Sequence record: NC_010152.1
DNA: 39,577 nt
Direction: 5' to 3' (one strand)
Shown: positions 8,893 to 22,378 of the stretch, in pieces
Layout of the letters: each line of letters opens with the position of its first letter
How positions within the stretch are numbered: the first letter of the stretch is position 1
Translations under genes and position numbers: made by a program
Notes under the pieces: generated by a model
Told to the model about the DNA's origin: nothing
Seen by the model: the letters and a program-made list of their open reading frames with translations, nothing else
The model's database searches: none

Positions 8893-9081
8893 TTCTTCTT
8901 CCCTCTTATTATATTTCTGATCCCCCCTATATATATCTTATTATGATTAGATTACCGACACTCTGAATATTTATCTCAAGAAGATGAGAAAATAGTGGAA
9001 ATCGATAAATATTTTTAGCAGATAAAGATAGTAAAAATATCTGAAAAGTGAAAAAAATGGTAAATAAAAAATAGAATAACT

Positions 9082-9570
9082 TTACCTGAAGTGTTTTAGA
9101 TCGTAGAGTTTGTAACATGCTAACTCGATTTCTCTGTCTCTGCATTCTTCTTTGTACATTTGTATTTTTACCGATAGCTTCTCTCTCCATAGATATTTTA
9201 GTAATTCCTTAATAAAAATTTCTTCCAGTTTCCAGTTTGTGTAGCAATGCTCTTCTTGGCACTTACATTCTTTAAAGATCATTTCTAGAAACATTTTGTT
9301 CTGTATAGTTTCTAATAATCGTAAATTGTAGTTCCAAAATTCAACGGTGAAATCAGTTACATGAAAGTCAAATTCTATTGTTTTTCTTTCTGCAAGTTTG
9401 TCGTCAATCCATAGATAATCCATCACTCTTACCGTTATTTCATTTCCATATTCTTTTGGTCTTCTTGGTATTGATATTGCGACTTCTTTTTCTAAGAATT
9501 TACCTTGCCACCCAGATAAAAAAATATTTGTCTCAAAATTATTTTTTGAAATTGAAGTTACATACCTCAT
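9082..9570 (-). CDS. Hypothetical protein (162 aa), anti-defence candidate
   Basis: Own promoter (CAAAAAGACTTATATATCC) and GGGGGA SD. Confidence 0.8.
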   Translation of the reverse strand: MRYVTSISKNNFETNIFLSGWQGKFLEKEVAISIPRRPKEYGNEITVRVMDYLWIDDKLAERKTIEFDFHVTDFTVEFWNYNLRLLETIQNKMFLEMIFKECKCQEEHCYTNWKLEEIFIKELLKYLWREKLSVKIQMYKEECRDREIELACYKLYDLKHFR

Positions 9571-9606
9571 AGTATCCCCCTTTTAATTATTATATTTTGG
9601 GAAAAT

Positions 9607-9626
9607 GGATATATAAGTCTTTTTGC
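9607..9626 (-). promoter_or_regulatory. Early-type promoter of ORF162
   Basis: GCAAAAAGACTTATATATCC. Confidence 0.8.
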
Positions 9627-9700
9627 GATACTTTACGCCGTTTTGCTTCTTATTATTGAGACTTTCTTCTTTTATAGTATTACTATGTAATTGTCTAATT

Positions 9701-9853
9701 ATGAGTCTAGAATATGAAATTCTAAAAGTTGAGTGTAAAGAGAAAAATTGCTTTGTAACCGTCAAACTAATAAGAAATGGTACAATAGAGATTTTCAATT
9801 CTGTACCAATTGAAAATATAAATAAACTGATAGAGAATTTCTCATTTTTTTAG
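9701..9853 (+). CDS. Small hypothetical protein (50 aa, MSLEYEIL...)
   Basis: Internal ATG of the tracked ORF 9623-9853, with TTTTATA ~25 nt upstream (leaderless). Confidence 0.5.
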   Translation: MSLEYEILKVECKEKNCFVTVKLIRNGTIEIFNSVPIENINKLIENFSFF

Positions 9854-9943
9854 TCGAAAAATAATTTTTGATTCTGTATAATACCAAATTGGTTTTCAAT
9901 TTCACTTTCTATGTGTGTAGGAAAAAGTTTACATTCACATTAT

Positions 9944-10270
9944 CAAAATTTTACTAGTTGAGCTTATACCTTATTAGTCTAGTTTACGCTTAGCATTTTT
10001 GAAATGTAGTTAATACCCGCATTTTTTATTTCAAGAAGAGAGATCAATTAACGTTTGTCTGCACAAAATTCTACTATCCTGATTTATACTTTACTAGTCA
10101 AGTTTAAATTGTAAACCAGGCGGGAAAGTCTTGTAATTGTCAAGTTTGAACTATAATAAAAGAATTGAGAGGATTAGGAAATTGTGAAGAAGAATGAAAA
10201 CAATTAACGTTTGTCCGCACAAAAATCTACTAGACTTACTTATACTTTACTATTCAGATATACGCTTAGC
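9944..10270 (+). repeat. Three degenerate direct repeats in a non-coding region
   Basis: 10045-10101 and 10201-10257 share CAATTAACGTTTGTC(T/C)GCACAAAA(T/A)TCTACTA...TTATACTTTACTA. 9944-9994 is a partial copy ending in TACGCTTAGC, as does 10261-10270. Confidence 0.85.
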
Positions 10271-10309
10271 TGATTTACAATTAATATAGAAATTTTATTA
10301 CAAAAATTT

Positions 10310-10390
10310 GAAAAATTACTTGAAAACTGAGAAAATACCCTAATTTGAGGCATCTTCTTACTCTAGAACAAAGTTTTCAAGTAATTTTTC
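10310..10390. repeat. Perfect 19-bp inverted repeat with a 43-bp spacer
   Basis: GAAAAATTACTTGAAAACT (10310-10328) and AGTTTTCAAGTAATTTTTC (10372-10390). Confidence 0.9.
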
Positions 10391-10900
10391 TATTGTATGT
10401 AATATATTTTGTAAAGTGTAATAAAGTGATCTTAATGTGGAGAAAAAGATATATAAGCTTATTATTCAATATGTATAATAGTGAAGGCTATGGAAGGGGA
10501 AAGTGTGATTCAGAGAATTGAGAAAACACATGAGATGGTAAAAAAACTAATAGAATTAGAGAGTCAACAGGAGGACATATGCATACAAATCTATCAAATG
10601 ATTGAACAATATGAGGATACGTTGTTACATGAAAAGGGAAGAGAAAAGTTTTTACAAATGAGAACTGAAATTCATAGTTTGTGTATGAATGCGCACAGGT
10701 CTCTGTTTCAATTAAAGCATGTATTTGCCGATTTGCTTTACGAAAGTTAATTCCCTTTTTTTTATTTGTTATTCATTCTTGATGAAGAGAATGGAACAGC
10801 ATGTATTATTTATAAATTATATAAGCAATTTTTCTATTGTATTTAATATATTTTGTAAAGTGCAATAAAGCGATCTAATTCTAGAGAAAAAGATATATAA
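10379..10900 (+). repeat. Duplicated 78-bp upstream/promoter block
   Basis: 10379-10456 versus 10823-10900: 70/78 identical, both ending in GAGAAAAAGATATATAA. Confidence 0.9.
10490..10750 (+). CDS. Helical hypothetical protein (86 aa), paralog A
   Basis: ATG chosen from the promoter and SD spacing; C-terminal CxxxxxxLFxL..VF.D.LY motif shared with the next ORF. Confidence 0.8.
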   Translation: MEGESVIQRIEKTHEMVKKLIELESQQEDICIQIYQMIEQYEDTLLHEKGREKFLQMRTEIHSLCMNAHRSLFQLKHVFADLLYES

Positions 10901-10933
10901 ATGTTTAAGGTAATATGTATAGTAGGGGAAAGT

Positions 10934-11188
10934 ATGGAAGAAGTAAATATATCTAAAAAAGTAACAATGGAAGAAACAAGAAAGCAATTGTTGAAAGAAC
11001 TTGAAGTATTAGAAAAGGTAAACGAAATTTTGAATAACATAGACAAAATAATGGCAGAGTTGGGCGATATATGCTATTCGGCAAGAGAATTAATGCCCCA
11101 GGTCAGAAAGGATCTAATAGGACAGTGTTCTGAGATTCAGAAAAAATTGTACAAACTGTATGACATAATTTCTGATACAGTATATTAA
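10934..11188 (+). CDS. Helical hypothetical protein (84 aa), paralog B
   Basis: ATG after AGGGGA; same upstream block as paralog A; QCSEIQKKLYKLYDIISDTVY. Confidence 0.8.
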   Translation: MEEVNISKKVTMEETRKQLLKELEVLEKVNEILNNIDKIMAELGDICYSARELMPQVRKDLIGQCSEIQKKLYKLYDIISDTVY

Positions 11189-11219
11189 AGTCAATTCTCT
11201 TTTTTTTATTCTTCTTTCG

Positions 11220-11349
11220 TTCTTGATGGAGAGAATTCTGAGTTATACTATAATTCATATATTATATATATGAATTATGTGTTTTCTCTTATTCTTGATG
11301 GAGAGAATGGTGTGGTATGCATTATACCTATATTATATATAGGTATAAT
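11220..11349 (+). repeat. Two 72-bp-spaced units, each a TTCTTGATGGAGAGAAT 17-mer plus a 13-bp-arm palindrome
   Basis: 17-mers at 11220-11236 and 11292-11308, with a 1-mismatch copy at 10776-10792. Palindromes at 11250-11278 and 11321-11349, both with a TAT loop. Confidence 0.85.
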
Positions 11350-11381
11350 AGTGTGTATAAAAAGTTCATATAAAAACAAAA

Positions 11382-13076
11382 TTATCTTGATTCGGAAATT
11401 ATTCCATTGTATTCCTTAAAAATGAAGTTGTATCTCTGTGAAAACTGTCTCTGAAATATCTGATGATCATAAGCAATATCCAGTATTATCCCTTTTTCTT
11501 TGTCTTTTGCAGGGCGCATTACTCTTCCTACTCTTTGCACTAGTTTTATTCTACTTTTTCCCTGAGATAGTAATACTATTAGGCGTAGATTTGGTATATC
11601 TAAACCTTCATCCGCTAATGATGTCGCTATTAACGTTTGAATCTTTCCGTTTTTCAGGTTTTCTATTTTTCTCATTCTCTCTTCTAATTTTGTCATTGAT
11701 GTAACAAAGTCTGATGATATTCCATTTTCATTGAGCATTTCTGATAATTTTTTGGCAGTTGATATTCTCCTTACAATTACTAGAGCAGGATATGCATTAA
11801 TTGATTTTATTTTCTGAATGATTTGCATATTTGTACCAGGAGAATTCTCAAATAATCTTAGCAATAATGAATAGTATTTCGCAAATTCCATTTTCTCTTT
11901 TTCTTTTTCTAATCTCTTTATTTTTTCTTTCAGTTTTTTCGGAATTTCTGGTATGAACGGAATATATTCTAGGGGCACTAAGTAATGATTTCTTACTAAT
12001 TCCTGATAATTAATGGAATAAGATATTCTTCCTAATAATCCATTAATTTCTAAATCTTTTCCATCCTCCCTGAAAGGAGTGGCAGTGAGTCCTAAACGTA
12101 TTGAACCTGGTGAATCTAACAACAAAGCTTTTATCGAATTGGCAGGTGTGTGATGTGCTTCATCAACTATTATCAGGTCCGCATTATTAACAATGTCTCT
12201 GAGTTCATTGTATTTATTACGCTTTTTCTGTGAGTAATAATAAGATATTGAGAGCGCTATCAAATTTGAATCCTTTTCTTTTTTCAGTTCATTTAGCTCT
12301 CCTGAAACTATTGCAAAGTTCAAATCTTCCTTTTTGGCAAATTGTTGAAATTGTTTTAGTAATGTCGTTGAATTTACTGCGTAAATAATTTTCGGATTTC
12401 TTTTATTCTTTAGCATTTCTAACGTTGCTAATATAGAAATCACAGATTTTCCCGCCCCTGTTGGCGCCTTTATTATTCCTTCACCAATTATATTAACATC
12501 ATTGATCCATGACTTTATCGAATTTATCTGATATTCTCTTAACTCAAAGTTTTTCAATGTGATATCATGATATTGTAAATTGGTAAAGGGTTGTAATCTT
12601 ATTTCGCTAATGTTTAGCAGTTTCCAGTACAATCCTCTATAAGTTGTGAAGTAATCGTAATGTTCCCAGGCTAGTAGTATCTCTTCTTCATTATATTCCC
12701 CTTTCTGATGGTCGAATTTCTTTAGTTTATATGATAACATTTTTTTGTATTTTTCTAAGTCATCGTAAACATAAATATAATTTCCTCTAATTTTCGCATA
12801 TATAATTTCTTTCTCACTGTTGGTATAAGGCAATAAGATTTTGTAAATTTCCTCATCTACATATTGTGACAGAAAGTCAGCAATTTTTCGTAATTCTTCT
12901 TTTGGTAACTTAGATATTTTGAACTCATTGAGGTACCAGACTCTATCTTCAGGACTGAAATCAGCGATAGATTTTACTGTCAAGAGATATTCTCTAAATT
13001 CGTCTTTCTGCAAATATCTTTTTGGTTTCGGGATCGCAATTTTATTATTTTGCTGAAACATATTATCCACACTCAT
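11382..13076 (-). CDS. SF2 helicase, XPB/Rad25(SSL2)-like (564 aa)
   Basis: LREYQ, APTGAGKS, DEAHH, LGLTATPFREDG, ADEGLDIP, QRVGRVMR. Confidence 0.95.
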   Translation of the reverse strand: MSVDNMFQQNNKIAIPKPKRYLQKDEFREYLLTVKSIADFSPEDRVWYLNEFKISKLPKEELRKIADFLSQYVDEEIYKILLPYTNSEKEIIYAKIRGNYIYVYDDLEKYKKMLSYKLKKFDHQKGEYNEEEILLAWEHYDYFTTYRGLYWKLLNISEIRLQPFTNLQYHDITLKNFELREYQINSIKSWINDVNIIGEGIIKAPTGAGKSVISILATLEMLKNKRNPKIIYAVNSTTLLKQFQQFAKKEDLNFAIVSGELNELKKEKDSNLIALSISYYYSQKKRNKYNELRDIVNNADLIIVDEAHHTPANSIKALLLDSPGSIRLGLTATPFREDGKDLEINGLLGRISYSINYQELVRNHYLVPLEYIPFIPEIPKKLKEKIKRLEKEKEKMEFAKYYSLLLRLFENSPGTNMQIIQKIKSINAYPALVIVRRISTAKKLSEMLNENGISSDFVTSMTKLEERMRKIENLKNGKIQTLIATSLADEGLDIPNLRLIVLLSQGKSRIKLVQRVGRVMRPAKDKEKGIILDIAYDHQIFQRQFSQRYNFIFKEYNGIISESR

Positions 13077-14604: not shown

Positions 14605-14638
14605 AAAGTTTATATATTTTTTTCTCCTACTTTTTCTT

Positions 14639-19948: not shown

Positions 19949-20412
19949 CTAACTATCACCCCATGTATTCCGCAGTCAATTTTCCTGTTGTAAGTGAAAA
20001 CGAGCTCGGCGCAATACCCGATAGAGTTTATTTGCATTGGGTTCAGATCGTCGTAAGCCTCAAACGTGACGATAGGATCTCCGTCATCATTGTACCCCTT
20101 CGTCGTTTTTTTCACTATGACGTGAGAATCAAGCCTCAACATTTTCCCTATATACACATACACGGCGTTGTTATAAAGGGTGAAGGGCGGTTTAACTTCA
20201 ATCTCTGTTGCACCGTTGTAGCCAAGCTCGGCTAGTAAGATGGGGACAAAAACCGGTGGAATCTTCTTAATGTGCTCGTAAGCGAGCACGACGTTATAGT
20301 TGTTAGTGCAAAGATCGTAATGATTATCATACTCGTCTAGGAATTTATACTCGTCGCCTCTGAGGCAGACGTATTTTTTACCTGAGGCGAGATACATCTC
20401 GTAGATTTTCAT
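19945..20412 (-). CDS. Hypothetical protein (155 aa)
   Basis: Operon packing with 4-nt overlap. Confidence 0.75.
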
Positions 20413-22094: not shown

Positions 22095-22378
22095 GGGTTA
22101 CACAACTTACTATTCTTCAACTCGGGTATATAAGTGCATAAAACAACTATTATTTGATTCAATACTTTAAATTCCTGGCTTTCATTTAATGCTTCTTTTA
22201 CTGTCTTTCTAATTCTTCTTTCGAATTCTTCACTCAAGATAATTTGTTGGACTATTTTTTCAATTTCCTTTTGAGTTTCTTCTTTTCGTGATTTGTTGAT
22301 TCTATATAGGTAAAATAGTACAGTAATGAATGTTGCTAATTCATATGTTATGAATTCCATCTCTAATATTAGAGACAT
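22091..22378 (-). CDS. Membrane protein (95 aa), probable virus-associated pyramid protein (SIFV gp43-like)
   Basis: N-terminal TM helix, helical body, C-terminal Cys pair; position relative to the MCPs matches SIFV gp43 as I recall it. Confidence 0.55.
   Translation of the reverse strand: MSLILEMEFITYELATFITVLFYLYRINKSRKEETQKEIEKIVQQIILSEEFERRIRKTVKEALNESQEFKVLNQIIVVLCTYIPELKNSKLCNP

What the first reader, a model, noticed from the sequence alone, without database searches (positions are those of the whole stretch)
9854..10390. Gene-free ~540-bp region with iteron-like direct repeats and a 19-bp perfect inverted repeat
Seen in sequence: this is the largest internal non-coding stretch. It has two ~57-bp direct repeats 156 bp apart (10045, 10201), a partial third copy (9944), AT-rich DNA, and a perfect 19-bp IR with a 43-bp spacer (10310-10390). 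Transcription switches from leftward to rightward here. Inference: a candidate internal replication origin, or a recombination/protein-binding site. Lipothrixvirus replication initiation is poorly understood.
Basis: partly seen in the sequence, partly recalled or inferred. Interest (0 to 1): 0.62.

Follow-up and report, generated by a model that had tools for sequence, protein, structure and literature searches.

The report
Viral intergenic control region, not origin
The largest gene-free stretch of the archaeal filamentous virus AFV6 does hold the repeats described, but they are a triplicated, dispensable promoter-like unit plus a palindrome conserved across the virus genus just upstream of an early-gene promoter, and nothing computable points to a replication origin.

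Summary
The window is the whole AFV6 genome (Betalipothrixvirus). The repeats are real: 61-nt direct repeats (52/61 identical, 156 bp apart), a weaker third copy, and a perfect 19-bp inverted repeat with a 43-nt spacer. All are far beyond chance. One sub-claim is wrong. The strand switch lies at 9571-9700, because a conserved + strand gene (ORF50, phrog_17461, 9701-9853) is missing from the record.

The direct repeats are a triplication of one promoter-like unit. AFV7 shares it. AFV3 and AFV8 have one degenerate copy, and hot-spring metagenomes hold both forms. So the repeats are dispensable and not iteron-like.

The inverted repeat is conserved in AFV3/6/7/8 with two compensatory pair changes. 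It is a weak but reciprocal HMM homologue of a palindrome found at the same position in SIFV, SIFV2, AFV9 and metagenomic relatives: after the ORF50 homologue, 60-130 nt before the next gene's promoter.

Third-codon AT skew runs as one gradient from end to end, crosses zero near the genome centre, and shows no break at 10 kb. This argues against an origin here.

Best reading (0.42): an intergenic control region whose palindrome is an operator or upstream element. Rivals are a small hairpin RNA, a priming site and a recombination relic. The scan noted this same stretch before, not other DNA.

The parts
9701..9853 (+). ORF50, a conserved 50-aa gene (phrog_17461) that is not in the AFV6 record. 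It defines the left border of the gene-free stretch.
   Evidence: AF2 model with pLDDT 86, three strands plus a helix
9854..9950 (+). About 100 nt after ORF50 that are conserved in AFV3/6/7/8. They hold T-runs at the stop codon (a likely terminator) and the start of unit a.
   Evidence: alignment; blastn 77-85% identity to AFV3/AFV8
9920..9996 (+). Unit a, the partial third repeat copy. It has a BRE/TATA-like element followed about 20 nt later by the TTTTACTAG motif. It resembles the first promoter/TSS-like block of the SIFV-type non-coding region.
   Evidence: read from the sequence; blastn to the SIFV block is only E 0.005-0.04
9951..10236 (.). Module present in AFV6 and AFV7 only. In AFV3/AFV8 about 60-65 nt stand in its place.
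   Evidence: metagenome joint 9930->10266 and an AFV3-like loose end at 9951
10040..10100 (+). Direct repeat copy 1 (unit b)
10196..10256 (+). Direct repeat copy 2 (unit c). The shared tail with unit a runs on to 10270.
10281..10288 (+). TATA-like octamer 29 nt upstream of the base of the stem. It is invariant in three of the four viruses.
   Evidence: sequence, alignment; its function is inferred
10310..10328 (.). 5' arm of the perfect 19-bp inverted repeat
10338..10350 (.). Small apex palindrome inside the 43-nt spacer. It is conserved in all four viruses and aligns with the apex of the SIFV-type palindrome.
10372..10390 (.). 3' arm of the inverted repeat. It ends in a T5 run and continues without a break into the conserved upstream region of the ORF89 promoter.
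10440..10457 (+). Strong BRE/TATA promoter motif of the cassette genes. The ORF89 ATG follows at 10490.
10490..10750 (+). ORF89, an AFV6-specific cassette gene. The conserved start is the ATG at 10490, not the annotated GTG at 10481.
10823..10900 (+). Second copy of the 3' arm plus upstream promoter region (90% identical to 10379-10456). It lies ahead of ORF84b and has no 5' arm.

Best explanation
The stretch is AFV6's version of an intergenic control region. In every betalipothrixvirus examined, such a region follows the small conserved gene ORF50 and precedes the first of a row of small genes driven by one strong promoter type. It has three layers. (1) T-runs end the ORF50 transcript. (2) A promoter-like unit follows, made of a BRE/TATA-like element and, about 20-27 nt later, the TACTAG motif. 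This unit is single and degenerate in AFV3/AFV8. Tandem duplication tripled it in the common ancestor of AFV6 and AFV7, and those copies are the 'iteron-like' direct repeats. They are accessory: at most they add weak promoters or regulator sites. (3) A palindrome lies next, homologous to the one in SIFV, SIFV2, AFV9 and environmental relatives. Its 3' arm runs straight into the upstream part of the ORF89/ORF84 promoter. I propose that the palindrome works on double-stranded DNA as a two-half-site operator or upstream element. A dimeric or oligomerising regulator, viral (ribbon-helix-helix (RHH) or winged-helix type) or host, would bind it and set or insulate the early cassette promoter 50-60 bp downstream. 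Shown here: the repeats, the copy-number difference between relatives and in nature, conservation of the palindrome, its position relative to the promoter, and the absence of any skew break. Inferred: promoter activity of the units, protein binding, and any effect on the downstream promoter.
For: ORF50 is a real gene, so the stretch lies between co-oriented genes. The direct-repeat module is present in AFV6/AFV7 and absent in AFV3/AFV8, and both forms occur in 2022 hot-spring metagenomes (joint 9930->10266 and an AFV3-like loose end). The inverted repeat and its flanks are about 73% invariant across four viruses, as high as or higher than the helicase gene (0.55-0.73 per 100-bp window), inside an otherwise variable region. 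The outer 8 bp and inner 4 bp of the stem never vary, which is constraint at the sequence level. The 3' arm plus the 65 nt up to the TATA box was copied together with the promoter ahead of ORF84b, so it behaves as part of the promoter's upstream region. Homology to the SIFV-type palindrome and onward through the promoter to the ATG is supported in both directions: the AFV-type HMM hits L052 at E 3e-4, AFV9 at 5e-4 and L010 at 3e-3, and the reverse HMM hits AFV8 at 1.6e-3. The neighbouring cassettes share one strong promoter motif, and the equivalent SIFV2 genes are predicted early anti-defence genes (PMC11065993). By the nearest-neighbour model the hairpins are at or near melting at 75-85 C, with dG between about -4 and 0; in AFV8 and AFV3 the outer 19-bp stem is already lost at 75 C. 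This favours a role on duplex DNA. SvtR and AvtR give precedent for archaeal-virus regulators that bind about 80-100 bp upstream and oligomerise into a promoter (PMC5569661).
Against: No regulator has been identified. The published AvtR and SvtR consensus sites have no match in the stretch. The half-sites are 62 bp apart centre to centre, which is unusual for a simple operator. Two compensatory pair changes occur in AFV-type viruses and three in SIFV-type viruses. Among one-sided changes, G-U-compatible ones on the gene-sense strand outnumber A-C ones by roughly 8 events to 2. Both patterns are what a transcribed hairpin would show. The units' TATA-like elements are poor matches to the genome's own strong promoter motif. 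No RNA data exist for this virus.
Confidence: 0.42

Rival explanations
1. The inverted repeat is a small RNA gene or a hairpin terminator. Transcription would start at about G10310, 29 nt after the TATA-like octamer at 10281-10288. It would run through the 19-bp stem and stop at the T5 run at 10384-10388, giving a hairpin RNA of about 80 nt. Alternatively the hairpin plus T-runs on both strands stops read-through from the repeat units and from downstream. The repeat units would be extra promoters feeding short transcripts.
For: The TATA-like octamer, the predicted start at the base of the stem and the T5 run at the end of the 3' arm are all conserved. Folding z-scores are -5.7 (+ strand) and -6.8 (- strand). 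There are two compensatory pairs in four AFV-type viruses and three in five SIFV-type sequences. One-sided changes are mostly G-U compatible on the strand that is co-oriented with the flanking genes. That orientation follows the genes even though the whole block is inverted relative to the helicase in SIFV/AFV9.
Against: The stem is A/U-rich and is predicted to melt at host growth temperature, with dG between -2 and 0 at 75-85 C. In AFV8 and AFV3 the outer stem is already lost at 75 C, and in AFV7 it is marginal (dG -0.4). Covariation support is weak, with 31 of 500 shuffles doing as well. In SIFV-type viruses a T6 run opens the 5' arm and should terminate transcription before the hairpin. There is no Rfam match. 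Other terminators in this genome are plain T8 runs without hairpins. There is no RNA evidence.
Confidence: 0.22
2. The stretch is a cis element of DNA replication. It could be an internal origin. Alternatively, the hairpin could act as a priming site on displaced single-stranded DNA, like the single-strand origins of rolling-circle plasmids and filamentous phages.
For: It is the most AT-rich DNA of the genome. It holds a long palindrome conserved across the genus at a fixed position. A helicase gene lies within 1 kb, directly adjacent in SIFV/AFV9. The skew gradient fits strand-displacement replication, which needs priming on the displaced strand. From my own knowledge, not checked here: AFV1 was reported to start by D-loop formation and strand displacement.
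Against: Third-codon AT skew of genes on both strands changes smoothly from about -0.8 at the left end to about +0.5 at the right. The cumulative minimum is at 22,364, and there is no step or kink at 10 kb. The direct repeats are dispensable. There is no initiator gene and no iteron architecture. The strand bias of wobble-compatible changes follows gene orientation, not genome-end orientation. The hairpin is unstable at 75-85 C.
Confidence: 0.12
3. The direct repeats have no function of their own. They are debris of the frequent duplication, insertion and loss of promoter-gene cassettes in this part of the genome, and only the palindrome and promoter are under selection.
For: Copy number differs between close relatives and within natural populations. 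A 444-bp promoter-gene duplication begins inside the 3' arm right next door. Many recombination joints fall at cassette borders in metagenome contigs. Unit a resembles a decayed copy of the cassette promoter, matching about 13 of 20 positions by eye.
Against: Units b and c are 90-97% identical between AFV6 and AFV7, while the flanks are 76-82% identical. The TACTAG-type block is invariant in SIFV-type viruses. No decayed coding sequence could be detected in the stretch.
Confidence: 0.2

Closest known systems
Non-coding region after the ORF50 homologue in SIFV, SIFV2, AFV9 and environmental betalipothrixviruses
   Same: The position is the same: directly after the phrog_17461 gene and before the first small strongly promoted gene. 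The length is similar at 480-580 bp. Both are AT-rich and hold several promoter-like blocks. Both have a long palindrome 60-130 nt upstream of the next promoter, with weak but reciprocal HMM hits.
   Different: The first about 300 nt of the SIFV-type region are not detectably present in AFV6. These include two consensus TATA blocks, a small covarying hairpin and the AATTGAAAG block. In AFV-type viruses the palindrome is split by a 43-nt spacer. AFV6/AFV7 have tripled one unit. The whole block is inverted relative to the helicase gene.
Early or anti-defence gene regulatory sequences of archaeal viruses (Bhoobalan-Chitty et al. 2024, PMC11065993)
   Same: There is a row of small single genes, each behind a near-identical strong BRE/TATA motif. 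The SIFV2 genes just downstream of the homologous region are in that paper's predicted set, and gp15 was shown there to be AcrIA.
   Different: That paper's motif spans up to about 100 bp before each start codon and recurs at every cassette. The palindrome here occurs once, upstream of the first cassette only. AFV6 ORF89 and ORF84b do not appear under the gp numbers I assigned by counting in the paper's tables.
Operator regions of the ribbon-helix-helix regulators SvtR (SIRV1) and AvtR (AFV6)
   Same: These are archaeal-virus regulators that bind imperfect inverted repeats up to about 80-100 bp from the TATA box and spread along the DNA (PMC5569661).
   Different: Neither published consensus occurs in the stretch. 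No binding has been tested.
Iteron-type replication origins of plasmids and phages
   Same: Direct repeats, an AT-rich setting and a nearby inverted repeat.
   Different: Iterons are short (about 17-22 bp), come in several phased copies and sit next to their initiator gene. Here there are 61-nt units 120-156 bp apart, no initiator, variable copy number among close relatives and no skew signal.
Single-strand origins of rolling-circle plasmids and the minus-strand origin of filamentous phages
   Same: A long imperfect hairpin in non-coding DNA of a genome whose skew suggests strand displacement.
   Different: The hairpin is A/T-rich and predicted to be unstable at 75-85 C. The strand bias follows transcription direction. 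No priming has been shown.

Membership tests
Iteron-type replication origin | Several short (about 17-22 bp) repeats in regular phase | tested here: not met
   Two 61-nt copies 156 bp apart plus a weaker copy 120 bp upstream
Iteron-type replication origin | Adjacent gene for the repeat-binding initiator | tested here: not met
   The neighbours are ORF50 (50 aa, no family function) and ORF89/ORF84b (helical, no family). There are no Pfam hits above the cut-off. The nearest enzyme gene is an SF2 helicase 1 kb away.
Iteron-type replication origin | Conserved in close relatives that share the replication machinery | tested here: not met
   The repeat module is absent from AFV3 and AFV8 and polymorphic in metagenomes
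Replication origin (any type) | Compositional skew changes sign or slope at the site | tested here: not met
   Third-codon AT skew is a single gradient with its zero near 20-22 kb. The cumulative AT minimum is at 22,364, and there is no break at 10 kb.
Replication origin (any type) | Initiation mapped at the site | not testable with these tools
   This needs 2D gels or marker-frequency data from infected cells
Structured non-coding RNA | Base pairs kept by compensatory changes beyond what relatedness gives | tested here: inconclusive
   2 of 19 pairs are compensatory in 4 sequences, and 31/500 shuffles do as well. 3 of 23 pairs are compensatory in the SIFV-type palindrome.
Structured non-coding RNA | Fold stable at the host's growth temperature | tested here: not met
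   dG is between about -4 and 0 kcal/mol at 75-85 C by the nearest-neighbour model. At 75 C the outer 19-bp stem is lost in AFV8 and AFV3 and marginal in AFV7 (dG -0.4).
Structured non-coding RNA | Match to a described RNA family | tested here: not met
   There is no Rfam hit in 9000-11500 at E up to 5 apart from two chance-level hits outside the stretch. No tRNA was found.
Structured non-coding RNA | A transcript with defined ends | not testable with these tools
   Only DNA metagenome runs hold this sequence
Mini-CRISPR array or solitary repeat unit | Repeat of 24-37 nt matching a host CRISPR repeat, with spacers of 30-45 nt | tested here: not met
   In AFV6 the period is 156 and there is no repeat-like 24-mer. 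In SIFV-type relatives only the last 9-10 nt (AATTGAAAG) match real repeats, and the upstream 16 nt match at most 10-11/16.
AvtR / SvtR operator | Published consensus site present | tested here: not met
   There is no AvtR consensus in the stretch at 0 mismatches, and no SvtR consensus at up to 2 mismatches
Betalipothrixvirus post-ORF50 palindrome (defined here) | Sequence homology of the palindrome and its 3' flank | tested here: met
   The AFV-type HMM hits L052 at E 3e-4, AFV9 at 5e-4 and L010 at 3e-3. The reverse HMM hits AFV8 at 1.6e-3 and AFV3 at 0.03, but AFV6 itself only at E 5.6. The support is real but weak.
Betalipothrixvirus post-ORF50 palindrome (defined here) | Position after the phrog_17461 gene and 60-130 nt before the next gene's TATA box | tested here: met

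The most novel reading that the evidence does not exclude
The palindrome, and in SIFV-type viruses the whole conserved non-coding block of about 450 nt (145 nt of which recur in rudiviruses), is not a promoter accessory. On this reading it is a dedicated cis or RNA element of Ligamenvirales. It could be the priming or initiation site for second-strand synthesis in strand-displacement replication. Or it could be the source of small, strongly expressed RNAs with an anti-defence role. The AFV6 triplication would then be a dosage variant.
Probability: 0.15. Interest if true: 0.7.

Novelty: new member of a known kind. Interest (0 to 1): 0.4.

Why it matters
How lipothrixviruses replicate and time their genes is largely unknown, so a candidate internal origin would have been valuable. 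This check removes that candidate and replaces it with four testable results:

- a corrected gene map, with ORF50 on the + strand;
- a genus-wide palindrome fixed upstream of the first early cassette promoter, which is a natural target for footprinting and reporter assays;
- a natural one-unit versus three-unit polymorphism that can be used as a ready-made experiment;
- a genome-wide skew gradient that points to replication starting symmetrically from the ends.

The conserved non-coding block in SIFV-type viruses, partly shared with rudiviruses, is a better target for non-coding-RNA or replication studies than the AFV6 repeats themselves.

Tried and rejected
- **tRNA and Rfam:** nothing was found in the stretch, and nothing relevant in the relatives' regions.
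- **Coding potential:** the 31-aa ORF at 10194-10289 loses its ATG in AFV7, has mostly non-synonymous differences, and its frame is closed in repeat copy 1 (read). tblastx of the stretch against the relatives and the rest of AFV6 found only the promoter duplication.
- **AvtR and SvtR consensus sites:** absent.
- **Mini-CRISPR or solitary repeat:** rejected for AFV6. It remains only a weak lead for SIFV-type relatives.
- **More relatives for covariation:** exact-pattern scans for the AFV-type element found only AFV3/7/8 in IMG/VR and nothing in metagenome contigs.
- **ORF50 function:** there was no PDB sequence match. The best Foldseek E-value was 0.1, to PX, dsRBD and PUR-like folds, which is too weak to use.
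- **RNA evidence:** no RNA run holds the sequence. Only contigs from DNA metagenomes do.
- **Papers not held:** the AvtR paper (PMC3536394) is not held. The library searches did not turn up the AFV3/6/7/8 genome paper or the AFV1 replication paper, so I cannot say whether they mention this region.

Full report
**Identity and context.** The window is the complete 39,577-bp record of Acidianus filamentous virus 6 (Betalipothrixvirus pozzuoliense, AM087121.2), a 100% match. Close relatives are AFV7, AFV8 and AFV3. More distant ones are AFV9, SIFV, SIFV2 and several uncultured viruses from IMG/VR and metagenomes.

**The observation.**
- Direct repeats lie at 10040-10100 and 10196-10256: 61 nt, 52/61 identical, spacing 156.
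- The inverted repeat has a perfect 19-bp core at 10310-10328 / 10372-10390 around a 43-nt spacer. It extends to 42-nt arms at 83%.
- With the local base composition, the direct repeat is expected about 3e-13 times and the perfect 19-mer about 6e-5 times. The longest inverted repeat in 200 shuffles was 13.
- A third, weaker copy of the unit lies at about 9920-9996.
- GC is 0.28 here, the lowest in the genome.

**One claim fails.** The record annotates ORF71a on the - strand at 9583-9798. That ORF has no family. The + strand ORF at 9701-9853 (ORF50) matches phrog_17461 at E 1e-31. It is annotated in AFV7/AFV8 and is conserved down to SIFV and the uncultured relatives. The gene-free stretch is therefore 9854-10489. 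It lies between two + strand genes, and the leftward-to-rightward switch is at 9571-9700.

**The direct repeats.** I aligned the four close relatives.
- The first ~100 nt after ORF50 and the last ~230 nt before the next start codon are shared by all.
- About 285 nt in the middle (9951-10236) exist only in AFV6 and AFV7. AFV3 and AFV8 have ~60-65 nt there.
- Spacer lengths are 636, 624, 390 and 384 bp.

Aligning the three AFV6 units with the single AFV3/AFV8 unit shows one ancestral unit that was tripled. Unit a has a BRE/TATA-like element followed ~20 nt later by TTTTACTAG. This is the same layout as the first conserved block of the SIFV-type region, where the TACTAG block is invariant. By blastn that similarity is only marginal (E 0.005-0.04), so I treat it as a lead.

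Four hot-spring metagenome runs from one 2022 study hold AFV6-like DNA as contigs. Laid on the stretch, they show a contig that joins 9930 to 10266. They also show loose ends at 9951 that read like the AFV3 form, and several other indels. Both forms therefore coexist in nature.

A repeat set that close relatives lack, with 61-nt units 120-156 bp apart and no initiator gene beside it, does not fit an iteron origin.

**The inverted repeat.**
- Across the four viruses, 93% of cells in the 19-bp helix pair. Twelve pairs never vary. Two pairs change on both sides (G-C to A-U). Three change on one side to G-U.
- With only four sequences the support is modest: 31 of 500 shuffles do as well.
- The flanks are also nearly invariant. 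The 100-bp window holding the repeat is 73% invariant in all four viruses. The neighbouring helicase gene scores 55-73% per 100-bp window and the variable region to the left 10-50%.
- The 3' arm continues into the conserved upstream region of the ORF89 promoter (GAGAAAAAGATATATAAG at 10440-10457). This 3' arm plus promoter block was duplicated ahead of ORF84b at 10823-10900 without the 5' arm.

**Wider comparison.** In SIFV, SIFV2, AFV9 and the uncultured relatives, the ORF50 homologue is also followed by 480-580 bp without genes. There, however, the block sits next to the helicase in the opposite orientation.
- These regions are homologous to each other over ~500 nt (nhmmer E 1e-100 to 1e-134; pairwise identity 62-70% between clades).
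- They contain several consensus-type TATA blocks and a small hairpin that covaries: GGGTTAGCCC in SIFV versus GAAG...CTTC in AFV9.
- They also contain a long palindrome with three compensatory pairs.
- A profile of the AFV-type region hits that palindrome in L052 (E 3e-4) and AFV9 (5e-4). It hits the 3' arm through the promoter to the start codon in L010 (3e-3). The reverse profile hits AFV8 at 1.6e-3 but AFV6 only at E 5.6.

I conclude, with moderate confidence, that the AFV6 inverted repeat is the local form of a genus-wide palindrome that always sits 60-130 nt upstream of the next promoter. The apex mini-palindrome at 10338-10350 matches the apex of the SIFV-type palindrome.

**Is it an origin?** I computed AT skew at third codon positions, expressed on the genome's + strand, for every gene.
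- For - strand genes it runs from -0.5 to -0.8 at 0-3 kb, to -0.2 to -0.4 at 7-19 kb, about 0 at 20-24 kb, and +0.4 to +0.5 at 27-39 kb.
- The + strand genes show the same trend with an offset.
- The cumulative AT minimum is at 22,364, close to the centre (19.8 kb).
- Genes flanking the stretch fit the gradient (-0.37 at 9.3 kb, -0.26 at 12.2 kb), so nothing changes at 10 kb.

A gradient that is strongest at the ends and symmetric about the centre is what end-initiated strand displacement would leave. This is inference, not proof, but it argues against a bidirectional origin at 10 kb.

**RNA or DNA?**
- For an RNA: a TATA-like octamer lies 29 nt before the stem base and a T5 run ends the 3' arm. 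Folding z-scores are below -5.7. One-sided changes are mostly G-U compatible on the gene-sense strand in both virus groups, about 8 events to 2. That strand follows the genes through the inversion.
- Against an RNA: the stems are A/U-rich. By the nearest-neighbour model they are at or near melting at 75-85 C, and the outer stem is already lost at 75 C in AFV8 and AFV3 and marginal in AFV7. SIFV-type palindromes begin with a T6 run that should stop transcription. There is no Rfam match and no RNA data.
- Arm-to-arm gene conversion could also produce compensatory changes without any hairpin function.

**Verdict.** The best-supported reading (0.42) is an intergenic control region. It consists of the ORF50 terminator, a promoter-like unit tripled in AFV6/AFV7, and a conserved palindromic operator or upstream element for the first early cassette promoter. 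The rivals are:
- a small hairpin RNA or terminator (0.22);
- recombination debris, for the direct repeats only (0.20);
- a replication cis element (0.12).

The regulator is unknown, since the published AvtR and SvtR consensus sites are absent. The ORF50 model (pLDDT 86, three strands plus a helix) has no significant structural match, so its link to the adjacent DNA stays an open question.

**Novelty.** The AFV6 repeats themselves are an ordinary duplication. Three things appear undescribed in the literature I could search:
- the genus-wide palindrome;
- the conserved SIFV-type non-coding block, 145 nt of which also occur in rudivirus intergenic DNA (SIRV2, E 1e-17);
- the skew gradient.

The original AFV3/6/7/8 genome paper was not available to check.

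Noticed in passing
window 9583-9853: The record's ORF71a (- strand, 9583-9798) has no family. The overlapping + strand ORF50 (9701-9853) matches phrog_17461 at E 1e-31 and is conserved across the genus. The AFV6 annotation is probably wrong here.
   Followed up: yes
whole window: Third-codon AT skew of genes on both strands forms one gradient, about -0.8 at the left end, 0 near 20-22 kb and +0.5 to +0.76 at the right end. The cumulative AT minimum is at 22,364. This signature suggests replication starting symmetrically from both ends by strand displacement.
   Followed up: partly
L015 2641-3259 (SIFV), L017 1202-1711 (SIFV2), L014 2641-3192 (AFV9), L010 6947-7454, L052 2564-3132: A non-coding block of about 500 nt after the ORF50 homologue is conserved across distant betalipothrixviruses (nhmmer E 1e-100 or better). 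It holds several consensus TATA blocks, an invariant TTTACTAGAAA block, a small covarying hairpin and a long palindrome. In SIFV2 it precedes the predicted anti-defence genes gp17-gp14.
   Followed up: partly
L016 1436-1582 (SIRV2 record about 20204-20350): 145 nt of that lipothrixvirus non-coding block also occur in unannotated intergenic DNA of the rudiviruses SIRV1/2/4/11, between ORF114 and ORF1070 (nhmmer E 1e-17; blastn 79-85%). They include a strong promoter-like block followed by the GGGTTAACCC hairpin and a T-run, so this may be a tiny conserved RNA or a shared regulatory site.
   Followed up: partly
L010 6966-6983; L015 2662-2672; L014 2664-2674: AATTGAAAG is invariant right at or after the stop codon of the ORF50 homologue in SIFV-type viruses, whatever the reading frame. 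It equals the 3' end of many archaeal CRISPR repeats, the crRNA 5' handle. Further upstream the match to real repeats fetched here is only 10-11 of 16. AFV6 lacks the block.
   Followed up: partly
window 10776-10792, 11220-11236, 11293-11309: A 17-mer (TTCTTGATGRAGAGAAT) follows the T8 terminators of ORF89 and ORF84b, and two of the three copies are followed by AT-rich palindromes. Several metagenome contigs break or rejoin exactly behind the first copy (joints from 10793), as if it were a cassette border.
   Followed up: no
window 10379-11266: There is a tandem duplication of about 444 bp made of upstream region, promoter, gene and terminator. It starts inside the 3' arm of the inverted repeat. 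ORF89 is AFV6-specific and only 20% identical to ORF84b. Metagenome contigs show many alternative joints between these cassettes.
   Followed up: partly
window 14609-14626 (- strand): A further copy of the strong cassette promoter motif (2 mismatches) points leftward into the 3' end of ORF122, with no annotated gene behind it.
   Followed up: no
window 9701-9850: The ORF50 model (pLDDT 86) is a three-stranded antiparallel sheet with a C-terminal helix. The best, non-significant fold matches are PX, dsRBD and PUR-like nucleic-acid-binding domains.
   Followed up: partly
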